This document shows positions 22,065 through 56,068 of a stretch of DNA of 64,000 nt, one piece after another (position 1 is the first letter of the stretch; each line of letters begins with the position of its first letter). Source of the DNA: Euprymna scolopes (Eukaryota); the NCBI GenBank assembly GCA_053919585.1, contig CM132801.1; one strand, 5' to 3'. The translations under genes and the position numbers were made by a program. The notes beneath the pieces are model-generated. The model was not told the DNA's origin. It worked only from the letters and a program-made list of their open reading frames with translations, and searched no databases.

Positions 22065-22269
22065 GATCATTCTGACAGACGTTAAAAACATTTAAAAATA
22101 AATGTTTAAATTTCAACGAAATTCTTCGTGGTTGACGGTGGCCGAATGAATTTATTCCTTGCTAATGGAGCCAGAGTTGGCTTCGTTGCCGGGTTCGAAT
22201 CTCCCAACCGGCGGTAATCGTGACACCCTGCACTGATGATTCCCGAAAGGATGAAACACTAGTGTGTGT

Positions 22270-22272
<3 letters not shown>
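22065..22272 (+). mobile_element. tRNA-like Pol III promoter + hammerhead ribozyme cassette, copy 1
   Basis: A-box TGGCCGAATG (22139-22148), B-box GGTTCGAATC (22192-22201), then a hammerhead core; homologous to 48510-48718 (minus). Confidence 0.75.
22227..22272 (+). ncRNA. Minimal type I hammerhead ribozyme motif (this copy has G at cleavage position 17)
   Basis: Stem I CCTGCA/TGTAGG, CTGATGA, stem II TCC-CGAAA-GGA, GAAA, palindromic stem III ACACTAGTGT. Confidence 0.7.
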
Positions 22273-22348
<76 letters not shown>

Positions 22349-39869: not shown

Positions 39870-40922
39870 TAATTACATATTAAAAATCTATCAAGTAAAC
39901 ACATATATTAAAAATAAACCCCTAAATACTCAGATTAAAAAAAAAAAATCATTAAATATTCATATATAGAAAAAAATAATCCCCAGCTTACACATATAAT
40001 AAGCCCCATACTCATGCATTAAAAACAATCAACTAAATACTCATATATCATAAATATTCCTTTATCGAAATAACAACAACCTAAATAGTCATAAATAGAA
40101 CAATTCGTTGCTTGTGTCGGTCGGCACTAATCCTATTCGGGTGTAACTGGATTCCTCCGAAGGAGGAAGTTTTATGGGAATATGAAATTCACAAGCGGTC
40201 CTCAGTTGCATGTAAATGTTAGAGGAGATGACGACGTTAGGTTTTTGCAACTCTTGCAGGGAGGTGTCGACGTCCTGCTACATACAGCGCCTGGAATTCC
40301 TAAATTGGTCATCCATTTTAGTAATAACCAGGCTCAACGTCGCTTAACTTCAGTGATCTGACGGGAACTGGTGTGTCAACGTAATTATGCCGTATAAGTC
40401 GTTGCTTACTGATATCTAAAAATCTCGTCAATACTCATGCATAAAAACTCGTCTAATTACTCATATATTAAATCTAAAACGATCATATATTGAAAAAAAA
40501 AAAAATCGCAAATACGCGTATATTAAAATAACTCCTTACATACTCATATATTGAAAAAAAAAAACTTGCTAATTAATTAAAGCCCATAAATAATCATATA
40601 TATTAAAAACAATTTCCCAACTATCCATATATTGATAAACATAACCCGAAACATTCATGTATAAAAATATCCTAAATATTCATATATTTAAAATAACCTT
40701 TTAAATACCTACATATCGAAAAACAATCGCATAAATACGCATGCCCCTAAATACTTATAAATTAAAACAACTCACAAAAATACGACGCTATAGATATCTA
40801 TATATTTGAGAAACAACTCCTATGACCTCATATAATAAAAACAACATCATAACCCCTTAAATACTAATATATTGAAAAAAGATCCTTAAATACTAATATA
40901 TTGAAAAAAGATCCTTAAATAC
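39870..40922. repeat. Degenerate minisatellite of about 30 bp, interrupted by a 5S SINE
   Basis: Recurrent CCTAAATACTCATATATT(A/G)AAAA units; perfect pair at about 40855-40922. Confidence 0.75.
40114..40398 (-). mobile_element. 5S rRNA-derived SINE (SINE3-like)
   Basis: The minus strand begins CTTATACGGCATAATTACGTTGACACACCAGTTCCCGTCAGATCACTGAAGTTAAG..., a 5S-like head of about 120 nt, followed by a body of about 165 nt. Flanked by the 9-bp direct repeat TCGTTGCTT (40105-40113, 40399-40407). Confidence 0.8.
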
Positions 40923-47676: not shown

Positions 47677-47705
47677 ATATATGTGTGTGTGTGTGTGTGT
47701 GTGTT

Positions 47706-48035
47706 AATACGGCGCAATCACGTTGACACACTGGTTCTCGTCAGATCACCGAAGTTAAGGAACGTTGAACCTGACCTGCACCAGATGGGTGACCATTTGG
47801 GAGGCTAGGCGCTGTATGTATCGCGAGGTAAAAATACCAGGTTGAGAAACTGTCGCGGTCTATCCTTCTCTCGAAGGTAGATGGGACTCTCTTAAGCTGC
47901 GATAGGCACCCCATCTAGTGTTGGCGTCACGATAAGAAATACCCTTGATAGCTCTGGAGAAGCATCAAATATTCAGCTACCGACAAGATTTGTATTTCAC
48001 TGCAAATTCGTGTAGTGAGTTCAATGGATGGTGTG
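47706..48035 (+). mobile_element. 5S rRNA-derived SINE (SINE3-like), second body type
   Basis: TACGGCGCAATCACGTTGACACACTGGTTCTCGTCAGATCACCGAAGTTAAG...GATGGGTGACC...GCGCTGTATGTA with no T-run terminator after the head. The 3' end is approximate. Confidence 0.75.
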
Positions 48036-48072
48036 TGTTAAGCAATGTAGTATATTAAGAAATATATGATAT

Positions 48073-48304
48073 GTCAAGCACCGTTGAGCCTGGTCAGTTC
48101 TAAAATGGATGACCATTTGGGAATCCCGGGTGCTGTATATGTTCTCCGCTTATATCGGCATTGTTTTCAGTCAATCTTGGGCCTCTCCTTGCCACTGGAC
48201 CCAAGCAGAGCCGGTTCAGGGGAGGTGTTGTTGAGGATTGTGTAACCCTTGCTTCACAATCTCATGCGCATCTATCCTTACAGGGATATCCAGTGTCTCT
48301 TGAG
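48073..48304 (+). mobile_element. 5'-truncated 5S-derived SINE, third body type (runs into a gap)
   Basis: AAGCACCGTTGAGCCTGGTCAGTTCTAAAATGGATGACCATTTGGGAATCCCGGGTGCTGTA is the 3' half of 5S. Confidence 0.65.
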
Positions 48305-48509
48305 NNNNNNNNNNNNNNNNNNNNNNNNNNNNNNNNNNNNNNNNNNNNNNNNNNNNNNNNNNNNNNNNNNNNNNNNNNNNNNNNNNNNNNNNNNNNNNNN
48401 NNNNNNNNNNNNNNNNNNNNNNNNNNNNNNNNNNNNNNNNNNNNNNNNNNNNNNNNNNNNNNNNNNNNNNNNNCATATAAAATTATTACTATAATAATTT
48501 TTTAAATAT

Positions 48510-48718
48510 CTACAGAAACTAGTGTTTCATCCTTTCGGGAATCATCAGCGTAGGGAATCACGATTACAGCCGGTCGGGAGATTCGAACCCGGCCACGAAG
48601 CCATCTTTGACGTTGTTAGCAAGGAACAACTCCCACAGCTAACGTTAATCTTAAGAAACACAGTTGAAATTTAAACATTTATTATTAAATGTCGAGACAT
48701 CCATCTATAGTGATCTAA
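48510..48718 (-). mobile_element. tRNA-like Pol III promoter + hammerhead ribozyme cassette, copy 2
   Basis: Minus strand ...GCCGGGTTCGAATCTCCCGACCGGCTGTAATCGTGATTCCCTACG-CTGATGA-TTCCCGAAAGGAT-GAAACACTAGTTTC-TGTAG; the upstream AT-rich leader also matches copy 1. Confidence 0.75.
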
Positions 48719-48889
48719 TGATTATACCATCATGATATGCGTAGTAACCGACTTTCNNNNNNNNNNNNNNNNNNNNNNNNNNNNNNNNNNNNNNNNNNNN
48801 NNNNNNNNNNNNNNNNNNNNNNNNNNNNNNNNNNNNNNNNNNNNNNNNNNNNNNNNNNNNNNNNNNNNNNNNNNNNNNNNNNNNNNNNG

Positions 48890-50072
48890 AAGTTTATTAA
48901 GTAAATGCAAAAGTAAGCCTCAGTCCAATGAACGTATAACTGTTTATATCTCAACCAAGTACCAAGTAAAAAAACTTGATACAACAGATCGAGATAGAGC
49001 TTAATTTCATAAGTATAAATAAAAACTGCAAATCAGAAATTTATAAAATCAGATATGTCAATTATCATAAGTTAGAGGAATAATCATCCTAAGTGAGCAA
49101 TGAATATTATAACTGTTATTGTGATCGATCTATATGACTGTTTTAATACAGAAGTTAATCAAGAAATGAATTACACTAAACTTATCAATCTTGATAATAA
49201 TGGACGGGAGATAAATAAGGGTACTATTTCTGTTTGTGCTTCCACAGGTTCTATTCATCCTAGTAAATTTATTGACCGTAGCCAGATGATAATAAGAATA
49301 ATATTAATAATACTAAAAATAAATTCATATATGCTAACTATGATAACTTGCAATGTGGCAACAGTAACAATCTAGGGACGGCTTTGAAAAGATTATGTAG
49401 TTAGAATAAATTGGGGTTGAGCGTTGAAAAGGTCATGAGTAGATCGATGTGGTTATAGTAATATATCTATTCATTTTAAAGTATAATTGTAGAGAGTACC
49501 GAATTTTAACCTGGTGTATAGTCTCATTGGTAGCTACGGAAACTGCAGATTATGTTGTGGAGACATATTAAATTAAGACAGTCAAGCTAATTAAGGACCA
49601 GTATATAATTTAAAATAAATTAAACGTAAGATAAGCCGGGAATAAGTGGGGGATTAAGTAGGGTTAGTTATGAGGCAGTGGAAAGGGTGCCAGAGAGGTT
49701 AGGTAATTTCAAAGTTATTATATTTGTATTTAGCTTTATGTTTGCATAGGAATATCAACTCACTTTTAGTTTTAACCACATTTTTGCGGGGAAGTCATTA
49801 TTCTAACTGACTCGGATAAGCACAGGCGACAGATTTTGGAATATGGGNNNNNNNNNNNNNNNNNNNNNNNNNNNNNNNNNNNNNNNNNNNNNNNNNNNNN
49901 NNNNNNNNNNNNNNNNNNNNNNNNNNNNNNNNNNNNNNNNNNNNNNNNNNNNNNNNNNNNNNNNNNNNNNNNNNNGAGAAGAACATTACATTCTTTGAAA
50001 TCCGCGGAATAAAGATATTTCTCCGCCCCTTGTCTGTCGAAAAATAAATTTGTACATGTAAATTTATGATTT
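48890..50072 (-). mobile_element. Penelope-like element 3' region (GIY-YIG tail + AT-rich UTR), fragmented by gaps
   Basis: Minus strand PYSKICRLCLSESVRIM (about 49772-49847) is the PLE C.LCL.E motif; downstream is non-coding AT-rich sequence. Confidence 0.55.
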
Positions 50073-50477
50073 NNNNNNNNNNNNNNNNNNNNNNNNNNNN
50101 NNNNNNNNNNNNNNNNNNNNNNNNNNNNNNNNNNNNNNNNNNNNNNNNNNNNNNNNNNNNNNNNNNNNNNNNNNNNNNNNNNNNNNNNNNNNNNNNNNNN
50201 NNNNNNNNNNNNNNNNNNNNNNNNNNNNNNTCTATTATATTTCATTTAGTTTCTGATGAGATGTATTAAGCAATTTTGAATATTTTTGTTGTTCATCTGT
50301 ATCCATATAAAGTTGAGTTTTTGTCGCACTGACATCGATATTAAAAGCCGATTTTTCTATTTAAAAAATATTAAAACGAGCTTCTTAATATACTCGGTCA
50401 TTGATATGCGAGCTACTAAATAAAGATGAACCAATTTGCATATTCTTTGAAAAACGAACTTTCATACTGACTTTTAT

Positions 50478-50624
50478 GAGATGAGAATTGGTTATTCGTA
50501 TTATTTGGATCCATTGGACTACTGTTCTCACCTCATCTCGAATTTCCATCCAAATTCCCGAGTTCGACAGAAACATTCCCAAGTTCGACAAGATATACCT
50601 GAAAAAGGTCGAAAATTACATCGA

Positions 50625-50627
<3 letters not shown>
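50478..50627. mobile_element. Internally deleted copy of foldback PLE family A
   Basis: GAGATGAGAATTGGTTATTCGTATTATTTG left end joined to right-arm AAATTCCCGAGTTCGACAGAAACATTCCC...CCTGAAAAAGGTCG...TTACATCGACC, truncated at (TA)n. Confidence 0.75.
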
Positions 50628-50691
<64 letters not shown>

Positions 50692-50694
<3 letters not shown>

Positions 50695-53529
50695 AGGCTT
50701 ACATTCACGAACATCCGTGGGCTTAGAACTAATTTAGCTGATGTTGAAGCACTTCTCATAACAAATACCCCGGATATCTTAGCACTACACTCCTCCATCC
50801 CCTCTAACTACTTTAACATGCCGTAAGGACTCTGAGAGACATATGCACGGACTTGGAGTCTACATTCGTAATACCCTTCCCTTGACTAGAGAAACAAACC
50901 TAGAATCGAACGATCAAGCCTTTATGTGCTTTAGACTAAACATGCAACATAACATTAGCTACTTTTATTTTCTCTACCGCTCTCCCTCGACCCAGGACTG
51001 TACCATAATAAACAAAGTCTCTGACAGCATAGACACAGCACTCTCCCTTGACACTAGCGCACAAGTACATGTATTTGGTGACTTTAATGTCCACCACAAA
51101 AACTGGCTTGGATTCTCTACTTACACAGACGCAGCGGGCAGCACAACACATAGCTTCTCTATATCTCACTCCCTATCACAAATGGTTACGTTTCCAACCT
51201 GTTTCCCTGACCAGTAATAGCAACACGCATCACTTCTAGATCTGTTTCTGACCACAGTTCCAGATGATTGTATAACGAATGCCGACAGCCCACTTGGAAA
51301 CGCTGATCATGCATTGATAATGGTAGAAATCGCCCTAAACTCTAGACCCAAAACTGAAGAGCCAGTGCACAAAACAACGAGATATTATAAAAAGGCTGAC
51401 TGGGAAGCCATCAGAAATCTTATCAGAGATGCCCCATTGGGAAATTTTTTTCTCTTCCTGCTGAACAGTGCGCCAAGGAGACCACTGAGTGGTTCAAAAC
51501 GGCAATTGAAGCACATGTTCTCATGCGGAAATTTTATAGTAAGCCCCACTCTCCCCAATGGTTTACTTCTACTTGCGCAACTGCCATTGCTCAAAGGCAG
51601 CATGCATACCGCAGATTTAACCGACATAAGTCCAGTTCAAACAAACAGAAGTATATAGAAGCTAGAAGTAACTCTAAGAAAGAAATAGCGACAGCTAAGA
51701 GAAAATTTACTGAAACCACTAAAAAACGCATAGAAGCACAAAAATTAGGAAATCGTGACTTCTGGAAAATCTACAACAGTGTAGTAAATAATGGGCAATC
51801 AACAATTTTCCCACTAATCAACAATCACGAGGTTGTTTGTTCAGCAACCGAGAAGGCTAACATGCTTGCCAAGTCGGTTTGCTTCAAACTCCACACTGGA
51901 CCCTTTCAACCACTCCCTACCTGACTTTCCTATGCGGACGATCTGAAAATCACCCCTGCTCAGGTGATTGCTACCATAAAAAACCTTGACACTTCAAAAG
52001 CATGTGGACCCGATCTCATCCCAGCTGTGCTATTAAAAAAGTGCTCAGCCGAAGTAGCTCCAGTTCTCTCCAAACTCTGCAGTAAATCTTTTAATGAATA
52101 TTGCTTTCCGGGCTGTTGGAAAACTGCTTCTGTGGTACCAGTATTCAAGAATTCTGTCGAAAGAACTGACCCATTAAATTATCGCCCCATTAGCCTCCTT
52201 CCACTTTTTGCTAAAATATTTGAGACCTTAATTAACCATGCTCTAGTCCATCACCTTACAGATGCTAAACTTCTGACTGACCAACAATATAGATTTAGAC
52301 AAGCCCGTTCCACAGCAGACATCTTAACTGTAATCTCTGAACGTATATACCATTCACTGAACAAAGCGGGGGAGGGCAGAGCGGTAGCTCTAGATATATC
52401 TAAGGCTTTTGACAGGGTATGGCATGAGGGTCTTCTCAGGAAAATTAGATCATACGGTATCACTGGTAGAATACTTAACATAATTAAATCCTTCTTAGAT
52501 AAGAGAAAAATCCAGGTTGTCCTCGACGGTCGTACATCTAAATAATATGATATAAATGCGGGAGTGCCTCAGGGGTCTATCCTTGAACCTCTATTGTTCC
52601 TAATATTTATTAATGACCTCCTCGACAAATCTGCCTCTGAGATGGTTATATATACTGATGACACCACACTCTATAACAGGCACGACAGGAAGACGAATGA
52701 ACACATATTTAGGGAAATGGCGGAAACACTAGAGGATGACCTCCAATCTGTAGTGGAATGGGGGAAAATGGATGGTCACGCTCAATGCCGCCAAGACTAA
52801 ACTTGTTTCCTTCAATAATTACAAAAAACCTTCTCTACCACCAATAGCAATGGCCAACGACTCTTTATCTGAGAGTACATCTTTCAAACTTCTCAGCCTA
52901 ACGTTCACAGGAAACATGAGTTGAAATAATTACATTGAAAGCATTGCAAGGGCCGTTGAGAAGAAAGTATGGTCTCTCTACCGCGCTAGAAAACTACTAA
53001 CACCCGAAAGTATCCTGTACCTCTATAAGGCCACCATTCGCCCATGTATGGAGTATTGCTGTCATATTTGGGCTGGTGTATCTGCTACTAGTCTCTCGCT
53101 CCTAGACAAAGTCCAAAGGAGAGTCGCCAATTTGATAGTCCCTGAACTGGCGTCTAAGCTTCAGCCTCTGTCCGATCGACTCTGCCTGTTATACAAGTAT
53201 TTTAATGGTGAATGCTCTGACGAACTGCAAGCACTTGAACCCCCACGACGTAAACACCCTCGACAAACCCGACAGGAAGCTAAATCCCACCCCCACTCAG
53301 TAGAAATCCCTAGATGTAAAAGATCTTTCTACTCCAGTAGTTTCTTCCCCAGAACCGCTAGACTTTGGAATTCCATTCCAGTTCCCTGCTTCCCCAACTG
53401 TACTGACGTGCAGAAGTTCAAGTGTAACGTGAACCGACATCTTGCTGCTCAAATCCCTACATAGTACCCCAGTAGTTGTTGCTCCTGATAGTAGCCCCCT
53501 ACACCAGTGGCAATGTGCCTTGTTTGAGG
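50692..53529 (+). mobile_element. CR1-like LINE ORF2 (APE endonuclease + RT), decayed, family 1
   Basis: FTNIRGL, LYRSPS, GDFNVHH, LDLFLT/DH (APE), then YRPISLL, LDISKAFD, PQGSIL, YTDDT, MEYCCHIW, FFPRT; several stops and frameshifts. The 3'UTR runs into a gap. Confidence 0.93.
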
Positions 53530-53659
53530 NNNNNNNNNNNNNNNNNNNNNNNNNNNNNNNNNNNNNNNNNNNNNNNNNNNNNNNNNNNNNNNNNNNNNNN
53601 NNNNNNNNNNNNNNNNNNNNNNNNNNNNNNNNNNNNNNNNNNNNNNNNNNNNNNNNNNG

Positions 53660-55019: not shown

Positions 55020-56068
55020 AATTTTTCTTTTACTCATGTTCACTCTTTATAAAGCATATCACCACTTGGACGTAAGGGGCTTCTATTTGGGGCCATGACT
55101 AGGAAAGATTAACAAGATATCTGTTTATGTTACATTTAAACTTCTGCATATCAGTACAGCCAGGGAAGAAGCAGCAGGAAGGGAATTTCAAAGTCTAGCT
55201 GTTCGAGGGAAGAAACTATTAGAATAGAAAGCTTTCTGGCATTTAGGGACAACAACAGTGAAGGGGTGAGATCTTATTGCTAAGCGCGTTTGTCGGGGAT
55301 ATGTACGTCGAGGGGGTACAAGTGAAACAAGTTCATCAGAACAAATTCCATTAAAATATTTGTAAAACAGGCACAGTGATGCAACATAGTGGCGATGGGA
55401 CAGGGGCTGGAGCTTAGTTGATAAATTTTGATCGATTAGATTGACAACTCTTTTTTGGATTTTATCTAAGAAGGAGAGAGTAGTGGTAGATGCACCAGCC
55501 CAATATGGCAACAATACTCCAGGCATGGGCGAATGGTGATCTTGTAAAGGTATAGGTTACTTTCAGGCGTGAGCAGACTTCTAGCTCGATCTAGGGAACC
55601 CACCTTCTTTGCAGCAGTCTCTGCAATATCCTCTATATATTTGCTCCAGTTCATATTTCCCACAAATGTTAGATCGCGGAGCTTGGAGGTCGAATTCTCA
55701 GGTAGGGTGCGCTTTGGATATAGGCGGTTGGAGAGGCGTCTTGTAATTGTTAAAGGAGAGCAGCTTAGTTTTACTAGCATTAAATGTTACCATCCATTTA
55801 CAGTCTCATTCCACTTTAGTCTGGAGGTCATTTTCTAACAATTCTGCCATTGTCTTAGATTTATGTACATCTGTTCTTCCCTCATGCATATTATAGAGCG
55901 TTGTATCACCAGCAAATATACCCATCTCGGACACAATATTATCAGGGAGGTGGTTTATAAATATAACGAATAATAATGGTCCAAGGATCGACCCCTGAGG
56001 CACTTCCGCATTAACGTTATGCTGCTTTGATATACGTCCGTCAATGACAACCTGTATGCTTCTATTGT
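55020..56068 (-). mobile_element. CR1-like LINE 3' fragment
   Basis: PQGSILGPLLF, FAGDT, RPCLEYCCHI, LQPLSHR, FFPRTARL on the minus strand. Confidence 0.88.

What the first reader, a model, noticed from the sequence alone, without database searches (positions are those of the whole stretch)
48510..50072. The tRNA-hammerhead cassette lies co-oriented downstream of a PLE endonuclease tail
On the minus strand the order is GIY-YIG tail (CRLCLSE), about 0.9 kb of AT-rich UTR, a gap, then leader-tRNA boxes-hammerhead. Homology between the two cassette copies extends about 70 bp upstream of the A box, which is not expected for an ordinary SINE. Inference: the cassette is the terminal repeat of a Penelope-like element (or a tandem retrozyme unit) that has acquired an internal Pol III promoter, linking a self-cleaving small RNA to its mobilising RT/endonuclease.
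Basis: inference. Interest (0 to 1): 0.7.

Follow-up and report, generated by a model that had tools for sequence, protein, structure and literature searches.

The report
Hammerhead retroelement beside dead Penelope fragment
A copy of a very abundant 341-base hammerhead-carrying mobile element sits just downstream of a dead Penelope-like retrotransposon fragment, but the two are separate insertions that probably hit the same target, not one element; the kind is already known.

Summary
On the minus strand, 49847-49772 encodes the C-terminal CxxC..E tail of a GIY-YIG endonuclease. Intact relatives of this protein carry every diagnostic motif of the Hydra clade of Penelope-like elements (PLEs). 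About 0.75 kb of its 3' UTR follows, then a distal piece of its own terminal repeat (49047-48889), a masked stretch, and the cassette (48756-48474).

The cassette is not this PLE's terminal repeat. It is one worn copy of a separate family:
- The unit is 341 bp from cleavage site to cleavage site.
- The hammerhead 39-mer occurs 21,286 times in the genome.
- Copies occur as 5'-truncated partial tandems with a 24-35 nt tail, inserted in (TA)n or (TG)n.

The PLE carries a different hammerhead. None of 38 PLE loci holds the unit. None of 29 other cassette copies follows this PLE's ORF, UTR or repeat. Two follow related PLE repeats across a microsatellite, and others lie head-to-head with PLE pieces. 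The best reading is pile-up at shared microsatellite targets.

The tRNA or Pol III part rests on A/B-box motifs only; Rfam and ARAGORN find no tRNA. Earlier agents of this scan reported this family on other DNA of the same genome. It is a new member of a known kind (Sm-alpha, animal retrozymes). The masked letters were not read.

The parts
48474..48756 (-). Visible part of one copy of the 341-bp-unit hammerhead element (about unit position 88 to 341, plus a tail of about 40 nt). Both ends run into masked stretches.
   Evidence: 89% identical to the family consensus over unit 115-341, and 97% over unit 1-33. Aligned with copy B. Family consensus.
48630..48641 (-). A-box-like region, degenerate in this copy. 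The family consensus TGGCCGTGTGG matches 10 of 11 positions of TRGCNNAGTGG.
   Evidence: Motif reading only.
48579..48589 (-). B-box-like GGTTCGAATCT, matching 10 of 11 positions of GGTTCGANNCC.
   Evidence: No tRNA called by ARAGORN or Rfam.
48508..48555 (-). Type-I hammerhead-like motif. Helix I is CUACG/UGUAG and the core is CUGAUGA. Helix II is UCC/GGA closed by U.U. GAA follows, then helix III ACACUAGUUU (family consensus ACACUAGUGU, a 10-nt palindrome). The predicted cut is after C48515.
   Evidence: The 39-mer consensus occurs 21,286 times in the genome against 0 for the control. It is below threshold in Rfam.
48757..48888 (.). Masked stretch, not read. It must hold the 5' end of the cassette copy and/or the 3' end of the PLE repeat.
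48889..49047 (-). Distal segment of the PLE's own terminal repeat. In fuller copies it lies just downstream of the PLE hammerhead, about 1.2 kb beyond the point where the window's UTR stops.
   Evidence: matches L036 3514-3658 and L034 3491-3618.
49050..49771 (-). 3' UTR of a Hydra-clade PLE-derived repeat.
   Evidence: At least 334 candidate copies. Twelve were aligned at 77-84% identity, ending at query 794-811, which is window 49054-49037.
49772..49847 (-). Last 24 codons plus stop of the PLE GIY-YIG endonuclease (the CxxC..E part of the Hydra-clade C-terminal motif).
49976..50072 (+). Inverted fragment of the PLE terminal repeat with the 3' two thirds of a PLE-type minimal hammerhead (GAGAAGAACAUUACAUUCUUUGAAAU). 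Its CUGA part would lie in the mask.
   Evidence: matches L036 3426-3529 direct and L035 429-322 inverted.
22088..22278 (+). Second, 5'-truncated copy of the same 341-bp unit. It has G instead of C at the cleavage position and is followed by (TA)n.

Best explanation
Two separate retroelement insertions lie head-to-tail.

(1) A dead fragment of a Hydra-clade Penelope-like element. It is 5'-truncated and internally deleted. It consists of an inverted terminal-repeat piece, the last codons of the endonuclease, the 3' UTR and the distal terminal repeat.

(2) One worn copy of a very abundant non-coding family built from a 341-nt unit. The unit carries a tRNA-gene-like A/B-box region and, at its 3' end, a minimal type-I hammerhead. 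The palindromic helix III of this hammerhead suits cleavage as a dimer.

Inferred mechanism: multimeric transcripts of the family are cut, or could be cut, to unit length by the hammerhead. They are copied into DNA in trans by PLE reverse transcriptase/endonuclease, which nicks (TA)n/(TG)n microsatellites. This gives 5'-truncated partial tandems with a 24-35 nt tail.

PLEs and their non-autonomous riders use the same targets, so they pile up in the same microsatellites. That explains the adjacency in the window.

Shown here: family structure, abundance, insertion anatomy, PLE identity, the different hammerheads, and the lack of recurrent linkage. Inferred: self-cleavage, Pol III transcription, mobilisation by PLE enzymes, and what lies in the masked junction.
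For: Family:
- The unit is 341 bp and contains no T4 run.
- The 39-mer gives 21,286 hits against 0 for the control.
- The 29 other copies are 219-664 bp long, with 5' ends spread from unit position 2 to 309. Most 3' ends fall at unit 24-35 (a few at 1-17) and run into, or lie beside, (TA)n/(TG)n.
- Many loci have a second hammerhead or a whole second unit upstream.
- Reads with 'goes back 340' joints are seen.

PLE identity:
- Alignment A2 of intact relatives shows RWK, ADKT, YRDD, CxCx5C, GIY..YIG without inner cysteines, and CxxC..E..N..CxH.
- These are the features listed for the Hydra clade in PMC8557442.

Different ribozymes: the PLE repeat has CUGAYGAGAAG..CUUYGAAAY.

No recurrent linkage.

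Shared targets:
- L002 and L016 have a PLE repeat, then (TA)n/(TG)n, then the cassette.
- L012 has an inverted PLE ORF, then (TA)n, then the cassette.
- PLE-type hammerheads are about 9 times enriched in cassette flanks: 5 seen in about 80 kb against 0.58 expected from 43,117 genome-wide. They occur in both orientations.
- The literature reports (TA)n bias, 30-40 bp tails, and tandem or inverted PLE insertions.
Against: - The junction itself is masked, so a microsatellite between the two elements in the window is only an analogy.
- The 29 copies were chosen by similarity to the window copy and have only 1.5-kb flanks.
- No autonomous PLE with this hammerhead or tail was found.
- Rfam does not call the hammerhead, apart from HH9 at 19.7 bits. 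Helix II closes with U.U. Free-energy folding does not give the hammerhead fold.
- PolyA RNA reads show no pile of ends at the predicted cut.
- The enrichment of PLE hammerheads near cassettes could also reflect repeat-rich regions in general.
Confidence: 0.72

Rival explanations
1. Co-integration. The PLE fragment and the cassette were laid down in one event. The PLE reverse transcriptase started on cassette RNA and switched template to the 3' end of a PLE RNA, the same way PLEs build partial tandems.
For: Three co-oriented junctions of PLE repeat followed by cassette: the window, L002 and L016. PLEs are known for complex tandem and inverted insertions.
Against: In L002 and L016 a 36-90 bp microsatellite separates the two. 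The PLE repeats involved belong to different subfamilies (69% identity or a different helix II). Head-to-head cases are about as frequent: L012 and L017. The copies differ in age-like divergence.
Confidence: 0.12
2. One reading: the cassette is the terminal repeat of this Penelope-like element, one composite element.
For: Co-orientation and closeness in the window, at most 132 masked bases apart. PLE terminal repeats do carry hammerheads (PMC4209133).
Against: This PLE family has its own repeat with another hammerhead. None of 38 PLE loci holds the unit. None of 29 cassettes has this ORF, UTR or repeat upstream.
Confidence: 0.04
3. Pure chance adjacency in a repeat-dense region, with no shared target or machinery.
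For: The window is packed with repeats: 5S-derived elements, a LINE and SINE-like repeats.
Against: The expected number of co-oriented PLE repeats within 150 bp of 30 cassettes is far below 0.1, against 3 seen. There is a 9-fold enrichment of PLE hammerheads in the flanks. Microsatellites sit at both kinds of ends.
Confidence: 0.07
4. An ordinary tRNA-derived SINE moved by a LINE, with the hammerhead motif incidental.
For: A and B box-like motifs 41 nt apart. A LINE with APE and RT domains lies next door.
Against: About 200 nt of element lie upstream of the A box. Copies are longer than one unit, with a second ribozyme. The 3' end is fixed 24-35 nt after the ribozyme. There is no similarity to the LINE. 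No tRNA is called by ARAGORN or Rfam.
Confidence: 0.05

Closest known systems
Animal non-LTR retrozymes / PLE-derived hammerhead repeats (Cervera & de la Pena; PMC4209133; bioRxiv 10.64898/2026.07.22.740005)
   Same: A unit of a few hundred nt bounded by type-I hammerheads with a short palindromic helix III. Units are dispersed and in partial tandem. They are non-coding and proposed to depend on PLE enzymes.
   Different: This unit also has a tRNA-gene-like A/B-box segment just upstream of the ribozyme. Circular RNA was not shown here. No similarity to the terminal repeat of any sampled PLE was found.
Schistosoma Sm-alpha / Sj-alpha SINE-like elements (from my own knowledge; the scan's earlier notes name them as well)
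   Same: A short abundant retroelement combining Pol III-type boxes with a hammerhead ribozyme.
   Different: The host is a different phylum and there is no sequence relation. Here the box region lies in the middle of a 341-nt unit rather than at the 5' end of the element. I made no direct comparison.
Hydra clade of C-terminal EN+ Penelope-like elements (PMC8557442)
   Same: For the neighbouring fragment and its intact relatives: RWK, DKT, CxCx5C linker, no CCHH, CxxC and CxH around E and N, its own hammerhead, (TA)n-associated ends, and Pfam-invisible RT.
   Different: No phylogeny against reference Hydra sequences was made. The window copy keeps only the last 24 visible codons.

Membership tests
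Hammerhead ribozyme, type I (dimer-type, metazoan) | Catalytic core C3-A9 (CUGANGA), G12A13A14, the A15.1-U16.1 pair, and H17 not G | tested here: met
   The family consensus has CUGAUGA, GAA, an A..U pair and a GUC cut site. In the window copy the core is intact and position 17 is C, but helix III has a C.U mismatch. Copy B has G17.
Hammerhead ribozyme, type I (dimer-type, metazoan) | Three helices around the core; helix III short and palindromic | tested here: inconclusive
   Helix I is 5-6 bp and stays paired in both window copies despite different letters. Helix III is the 10-nt palindrome ACACUAGUGU. Helix II has only 3 bp plus a U.U closing pair. The MFE fold is not the hammerhead.
Hammerhead ribozyme, type I (dimer-type, metazoan) | Match to a curated covariance model | tested here: not met
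   No Hammerhead family hit at E<=10 on the window copy. On 12 copies the only hit is HH9 at 19.7 bits, against a gathering score of 52.
Hammerhead ribozyme, type I (dimer-type, metazoan) | Self-cleavage | tested here: inconclusive
   PolyA RNA reads show no pile of ends at the predicted site. This is a weak test, and in vitro cleavage was not testable.
tRNA-derived SINE (Pol III) | tRNA-related head recognisable as tRNA | tested here: not met
   ARAGORN finds nothing in the window or in 29 loci. On the consensus it gives only a 101-nt oddity at a lowered threshold. There is no Rfam tRNA hit.
tRNA-derived SINE (Pol III) | A and B boxes at proper spacing near the 5' end | tested here: inconclusive
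   Each box matches 10 of 11 positions and they are 41 nt apart. They sit at unit positions 215 and 267, with about 200 nt of element upstream.
tRNA-derived SINE (Pol III) | Pol III transcription | not testable with these tools
   Only polyA libraries were laid. Most reads continue into unlike sequence.
Non-LTR retrozyme / PLE non-autonomous element | Non-coding unit bounded by hammerheads, in tandem or partial tandem | tested here: met
   Period is 333-342.
Non-LTR retrozyme / PLE non-autonomous element | PLE-style insertion: microsatellite target, 30-40 nt tail, variable 5' truncation | tested here: met
   compared with PMC8557442.
Non-LTR retrozyme / PLE non-autonomous element | Sequence relation to the terminal repeat of an autonomous PLE | tested here: not met
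   No similarity to 38 PLE loci. Only a small sample of the genome's PLE families was covered.
Non-LTR retrozyme / PLE non-autonomous element | Circular RNA of unit length | tested here: inconclusive
   'Goes back 340' joints occur in RNA, but genomic tandems give the same joints.
Penelope-like element, Hydra clade (the neighbouring fragment) | RT followed by a C-terminal GIY-YIG EN; RWK and DKT motifs; CxCx5C linker; no CCHH; CxxC and CxH around E and N | tested here: met
   Alignment A2 consensus and invariant columns. Sequences. Definition. The window copy shows only CxxC..E. Pfam finds GIY-YIG only weakly, E 0.005, and finds no RT.
Penelope-like element, Hydra clade (the neighbouring fragment) | Placement inside the clade in a phylogeny with reference sequences | not tested
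   No reference Hydra-clade sequences were at hand.
Terminal repeat (pLTR) of this PLE | The cassette recurs at the ends of other copies of the same PLE | tested here: not met
   The PLE's real repeat and hammerhead were identified.

The most novel reading that the evidence does not exclude
The co-oriented junctions 'PLE terminal repeat - microsatellite - cassette' (the window, L002, L016) may be scars of Hydra-clade PLE enzymes working on cassette RNA and PLE RNA at the same nick. They would then name the autonomous partner of a hammerhead element driven by Pol III boxes. The element would be a SINE-like rider of Penelope-like elements that makes its own multimeric transcripts, since the unit has no T4 terminator, and trims them with a ribozyme.
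Probability: 0.15. Interest if true: 0.55.

Novelty: new member of a known kind. Interest (0 to 1): 0.3.

Why it matters
The adjacency that looked like a physical link between a self-cleaving small RNA and its mobilising enzyme does not provide that link. The useful residue is threefold. First, the work gives a clean description of a family with more than 20,000 hammerhead copies and PLE-style insertion anatomy in a large mollusc genome. Second, it identifies the neighbour as a Hydra-clade PLE, a clade reported as rare in molluscs, with at least 23,000 candidate tails here. Third, it measures clustering of PLE-type elements at microsatellites, which fits a shared endonuclease target. If Pol III transcription of the box region were shown, the family would be a second, independent case after Sm-alpha of a Pol III promoter joined to a hammerhead.

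Tried and rejected
- Rfam at gathering and at E<=10 on the region and on 12 copies gave no tRNA and no hammerhead above threshold.
- ARAGORN on the window, on 29 loci and on the consensus gave nothing usable.
- Pfam on ORF pieces and on intact relatives gave only a weak GIY-YIG hit and no RT. PDB sequence and profile searches gave nothing. PLE identity therefore rests on motifs matched to the published clade definition.
- I tried to fetch 40 unbiased cassette loci with 5-kb upstream flanks, and the downstream ends of the PLE copies. The adjacency statistics therefore rest on 29 loci with 1.5-kb flanks.
- Free-energy folding of the hammerhead segment does not return the hammerhead fold.
- PolyA RNA reads show family expression on both strands with a 3.5:1 bias. 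The library chemistry is unknown, so the sense of that bias is unknown. There is no cleavage-site pile-up, and the back-joints are not decisive because genomic tandems exist.
- I first judged the PLE to end about 150 bp before the mask, with unrelated DNA in between. I dropped this when fuller copies showed that 49047-48889 is part of the PLE's own repeat.

Masked stretches:
- Loci cut from the window's own place (L001, L031, L043) hold real letters where the window reads N. I counted only the kinds of letters there and did not print or interpret the letters themselves.
- L001 was one of 30 rows in the first consensus and was left out of the recomputed one.
- Two BLAST rows touch a mask edge and were not used.

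Full report
**What is at the coordinates**

Read on the minus strand, the region contains the following, in order:
- An island at 50072-49976.
- A masked stretch.
- Codons reading PYSKICRLCLSESVRIMTSPQKCG-stop at 49847-49772.
- AT-rich sequence down to 48889.
- A masked stretch, 48888-48757.
- The cassette, 48756-48474.

The cassette holds a B-box-like GGTTCGAATCT at 48589-48579. It has a hammerhead core from CUGAUGA to GAAAC at 48548-48524, and a predicted cut after C48515. A second copy lies at 22088-22278 on the + strand, 81% identical over about 190 bp.

**The cassette is one copy of a large family with a 341-bp unit**

A search of the whole assembly (5.9 Gb) with the cassette gave 5,172 first-look candidates. 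The consensus 39-mer of the ribozyme, with up to 2 mismatches, occurs 21,286 times. The reversed control occurs 0 times.

Aligning 29 other copies shows that homology runs far upstream of the box region. It reaches a second hammerhead, and the distance from cut site to cut site is 341 bp.

The insertions have this anatomy:
- They are 219-664 bp long.
- Their 5' ends fall anywhere from unit position 2 to 309.
- Most 3' ends fall at unit position 24-35, a short tail beyond the ribozyme. A few end earlier, at unit 1-17.
- The flanks on both sides are very often (TA)n or (TG)n.

The window copy runs into masks at both ends. It is visible from about unit position 88 to 341, plus the tail.

**The ribozyme**

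The family consensus has the complete hammerhead core:
- CUGAUGA and GAA.
- The A15.1-U16.1 pair.
- The GUC cut site.
- A 6-bp helix I.
- A helix III that is a 10-nt palindrome, ACACUAGUGU.

This is the design that Cervera and de la Pena describe for metazoan and PLE hammerheads that work as dimers (PMC4209133).

In the window copy, helix I stays paired although two letters differ from copy B. Helix III has one C.U mismatch. Copy B has G at the cut position.

The weak points are these:
- Helix II has only 3 bp and is closed by U.U.
- Rfam models do not reach threshold.
- Free-energy folding does not give the hammerhead fold.
- PolyA RNA reads show no pile of ends at the predicted cut.

I therefore call it a hammerhead-like motif with an intact core. 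Activity is not shown.

**The tRNA or Pol III part**

The consensus has TGGCCGTGTGG and GGTTCGAATCT. Each matches 10 of 11 positions of the A and B box consensus, and they lie 41 nt apart. There is no run of four T anywhere in the unit.

ARAGORN and Rfam find no tRNA in the window, in 29 loci or in 12 copies. Only a lowered threshold gives an odd 101-nt call on the consensus. The boxes lie at unit positions 215 and 267, not at the 5' end. A Pol III promoter is therefore a reasonable idea but an untested one.

Loose read ends show the same ribozyme module joined to a different tRNA-like T-arm in another subfamily. The modules are evidently shuffled.

**The neighbour is a Penelope-like element of the Hydra clade**

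The stretch 49847 to about 49050 belongs to a repeat with at least 334 candidates. Twelve copies were aligned at 77-84% identity. Those copies carry decayed ORFs ending in the same tail. The tail alone has 23,665 first-look candidates.

Intact relatives have 539-569 aa open frames. They have 700-800 aa homologues in public data, one of them from Octopus.

Pfam and PDB searches do not recognise the RT. GIY-YIG is only weakly hit. However, alignment A2 shows RWK, ADKT, YRDD, a CxCx5C linker, GIY..YIG without inner cysteines, and CxxC..E..N..CxH. This is the list of features by which Craig et al. define the Hydra clade of C-terminal EN+ PLEs. The same clade is noted for insertion into (TA)n and for carrying hammerheads (PMC8557442).

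**The cassette is not this PLE's terminal repeat**

Fuller copies of the same PLE subfamily continue about 1.2 kb beyond the point where the window's UTR stops. They then show the PLE's own hammerhead, CUGACGA-GAAGAA..UUCUUU-GAAAC, which has a 6-bp helix II typical of PLE minimal hammerheads. After it comes the segment that in the window lies at 49047-48889.

The island 49976-50072 is the same repeat in inverted orientation. On the + strand, the 3' two thirds of that hammerhead are visible. An inverted piece next to a 5'-truncated copy is the arrangement drawn for PLEs in PMC8557442.

The window's PLE is therefore a dead, 5'-truncated and internally deleted fragment. It has its own ribozyme type, different from the cassette's.

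The 341-bp unit has no similarity to any of the 38 PLE loci I hold. None of the 29 other cassette copies has this ORF, UTR or repeat within 1.5 kb upstream.

**The adjacency is more than blind chance**

More sensitive comparisons showed three further junctions with PLE pieces:
- In L002, a related PLE repeat (69% identity, with its own hammerhead) lies co-oriented just upstream of the cassette. A (TA)n(TG)n tract separates them.
- L016 has the same layout with another PLE subfamily and a (TA)n tract.
- In L012, an inverted PLE ORF fragment faces the cassette across (TA)n.

The PLE-type hammerhead pattern occurs 43,117 times in the genome, one per 137 kb. It occurs 5 independent times in about 80 kb of cassette flanks, against 0.58 expected. 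It appears upstream and downstream and in both orientations.

There is no fixed distance or orientation, so this is not a composite element. It fits repeated insertion of PLE-type elements into the same microsatellites, which is the published target bias of PLE endonucleases. A minority reading is that some junctions arose in one event by template switching.

**The masked stretches**

Both sides of 48757-48888 are non-coding and belong to different repeats that run into the mask. Family alignments show the PLE repeat has about 80-140 nt still to go. The unit has up to about 88 nt plus an optional upstream ribozyme. Both cannot fit complete into about 132 nt, so at least one is truncated.

Across 49848-49975 no reading frame can be followed, because the far side is an inverted non-coding repeat.

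I found that loci cut from the window's own place carry real letters at the masked positions. I did not print or interpret those letters. I left those loci out of later analyses and did not use two BLAST rows that touch a mask edge.

**RNA**

Two polyA RNA-seq runs of the same species label cover the family at about 70 reads per million. Coverage is on both strands with a 3.5:1 bias, whose sense depends on an unknown library type. Most reads continue into unlike sequence. Coverage is highest on the shared ribozyme module. There are 13-15 reads per run with a 340-nt back-joint. Genomic tandems exist, so these joints do not prove circles.

**Comparison with what is known**

The element works like animal non-LTR retrozymes, that is PLE-derived hammerhead repeats (PMC4209133; bioRxiv 10.64898/2026.07.22.740005). 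From my own knowledge it also resembles the Sm-alpha SINE-like elements of schistosomes, which join Pol III boxes to a hammerhead.

Earlier agents of this scan described the same or sister families at other places of this genome and reached the same class.

**Verdict**

This is a new member of a known kind. The specific claim of this finding, that the adjacency ties the cassette to its mobilising PLE, is not supported.

Noticed in passing
window 40279-40397 (-), 47705-47820 (+), 48062-48141 (+, partial): 5S rRNA-like sequences. Two score above Rfam's gathering score (69.8 and 66.1 bits). They lie next to (TA)n/(CA)n tracts and are probably heads of 5S-derived SINEs.
   Followed up: no
window 50700-53530 (+), and 55188-56003 (-): A LINE with Exo_endo_phos_2 and RVT_1 domains, broken by frameshifts and preceded by (TA)n at 50622-50699. 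A second LINE RT fragment lies on the other strand. Neither has similarity to the cassette.
   Followed up: partly
window 50295-50465 (-): A 170-bp repeat with more than 4,000 first-look candidates in the genome at 83-89% identity. It is probably another SINE-like family.
   Followed up: no
L001, L031, L043 (the window's own place in G000): The whole-genome copy holds real letters where the window reads N, so these Ns are masks rather than assembly gaps. The letters were not read.
   Followed up: no
L036:3672-3796 and many places listed: The last ~125 bp of the PLE terminal repeat match themselves on both strands (an inverted repeat). The same stretch also occurs as short separate hits in several cassette loci.
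   Followed up: no
L016:1557 (loose ends in RNA reads): About 150 reads per run join the same hammerhead module to a different tRNA-like T-arm (GGGGTTCGAATC...). The ribozyme module is therefore shared by several families with different heads.
   Followed up: no
window 41043 (-); L033, L050, L051, L069: Another hammerhead-like family (CUGAAGAAGGUCG..CGACCGAAAC) recurs near PLE loci.
   Followed up: no
L025 and L026 (C14:21,663,675 and 21,644,297): Two cassette copies 19 kb apart have identical structure and flanks, including an inverted PLE-type hammerhead 160 bp downstream. This looks like a segmental duplication.
   Followed up: no
L004:140-184 (-), L011:2215-2259 (+): Rfam Hammerhead_1 hits at 33.9 and 33.6 bits, just under the gathering score of 34, in the flanks of cassette copies. 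These are further hammerhead families close by.
   Followed up: no
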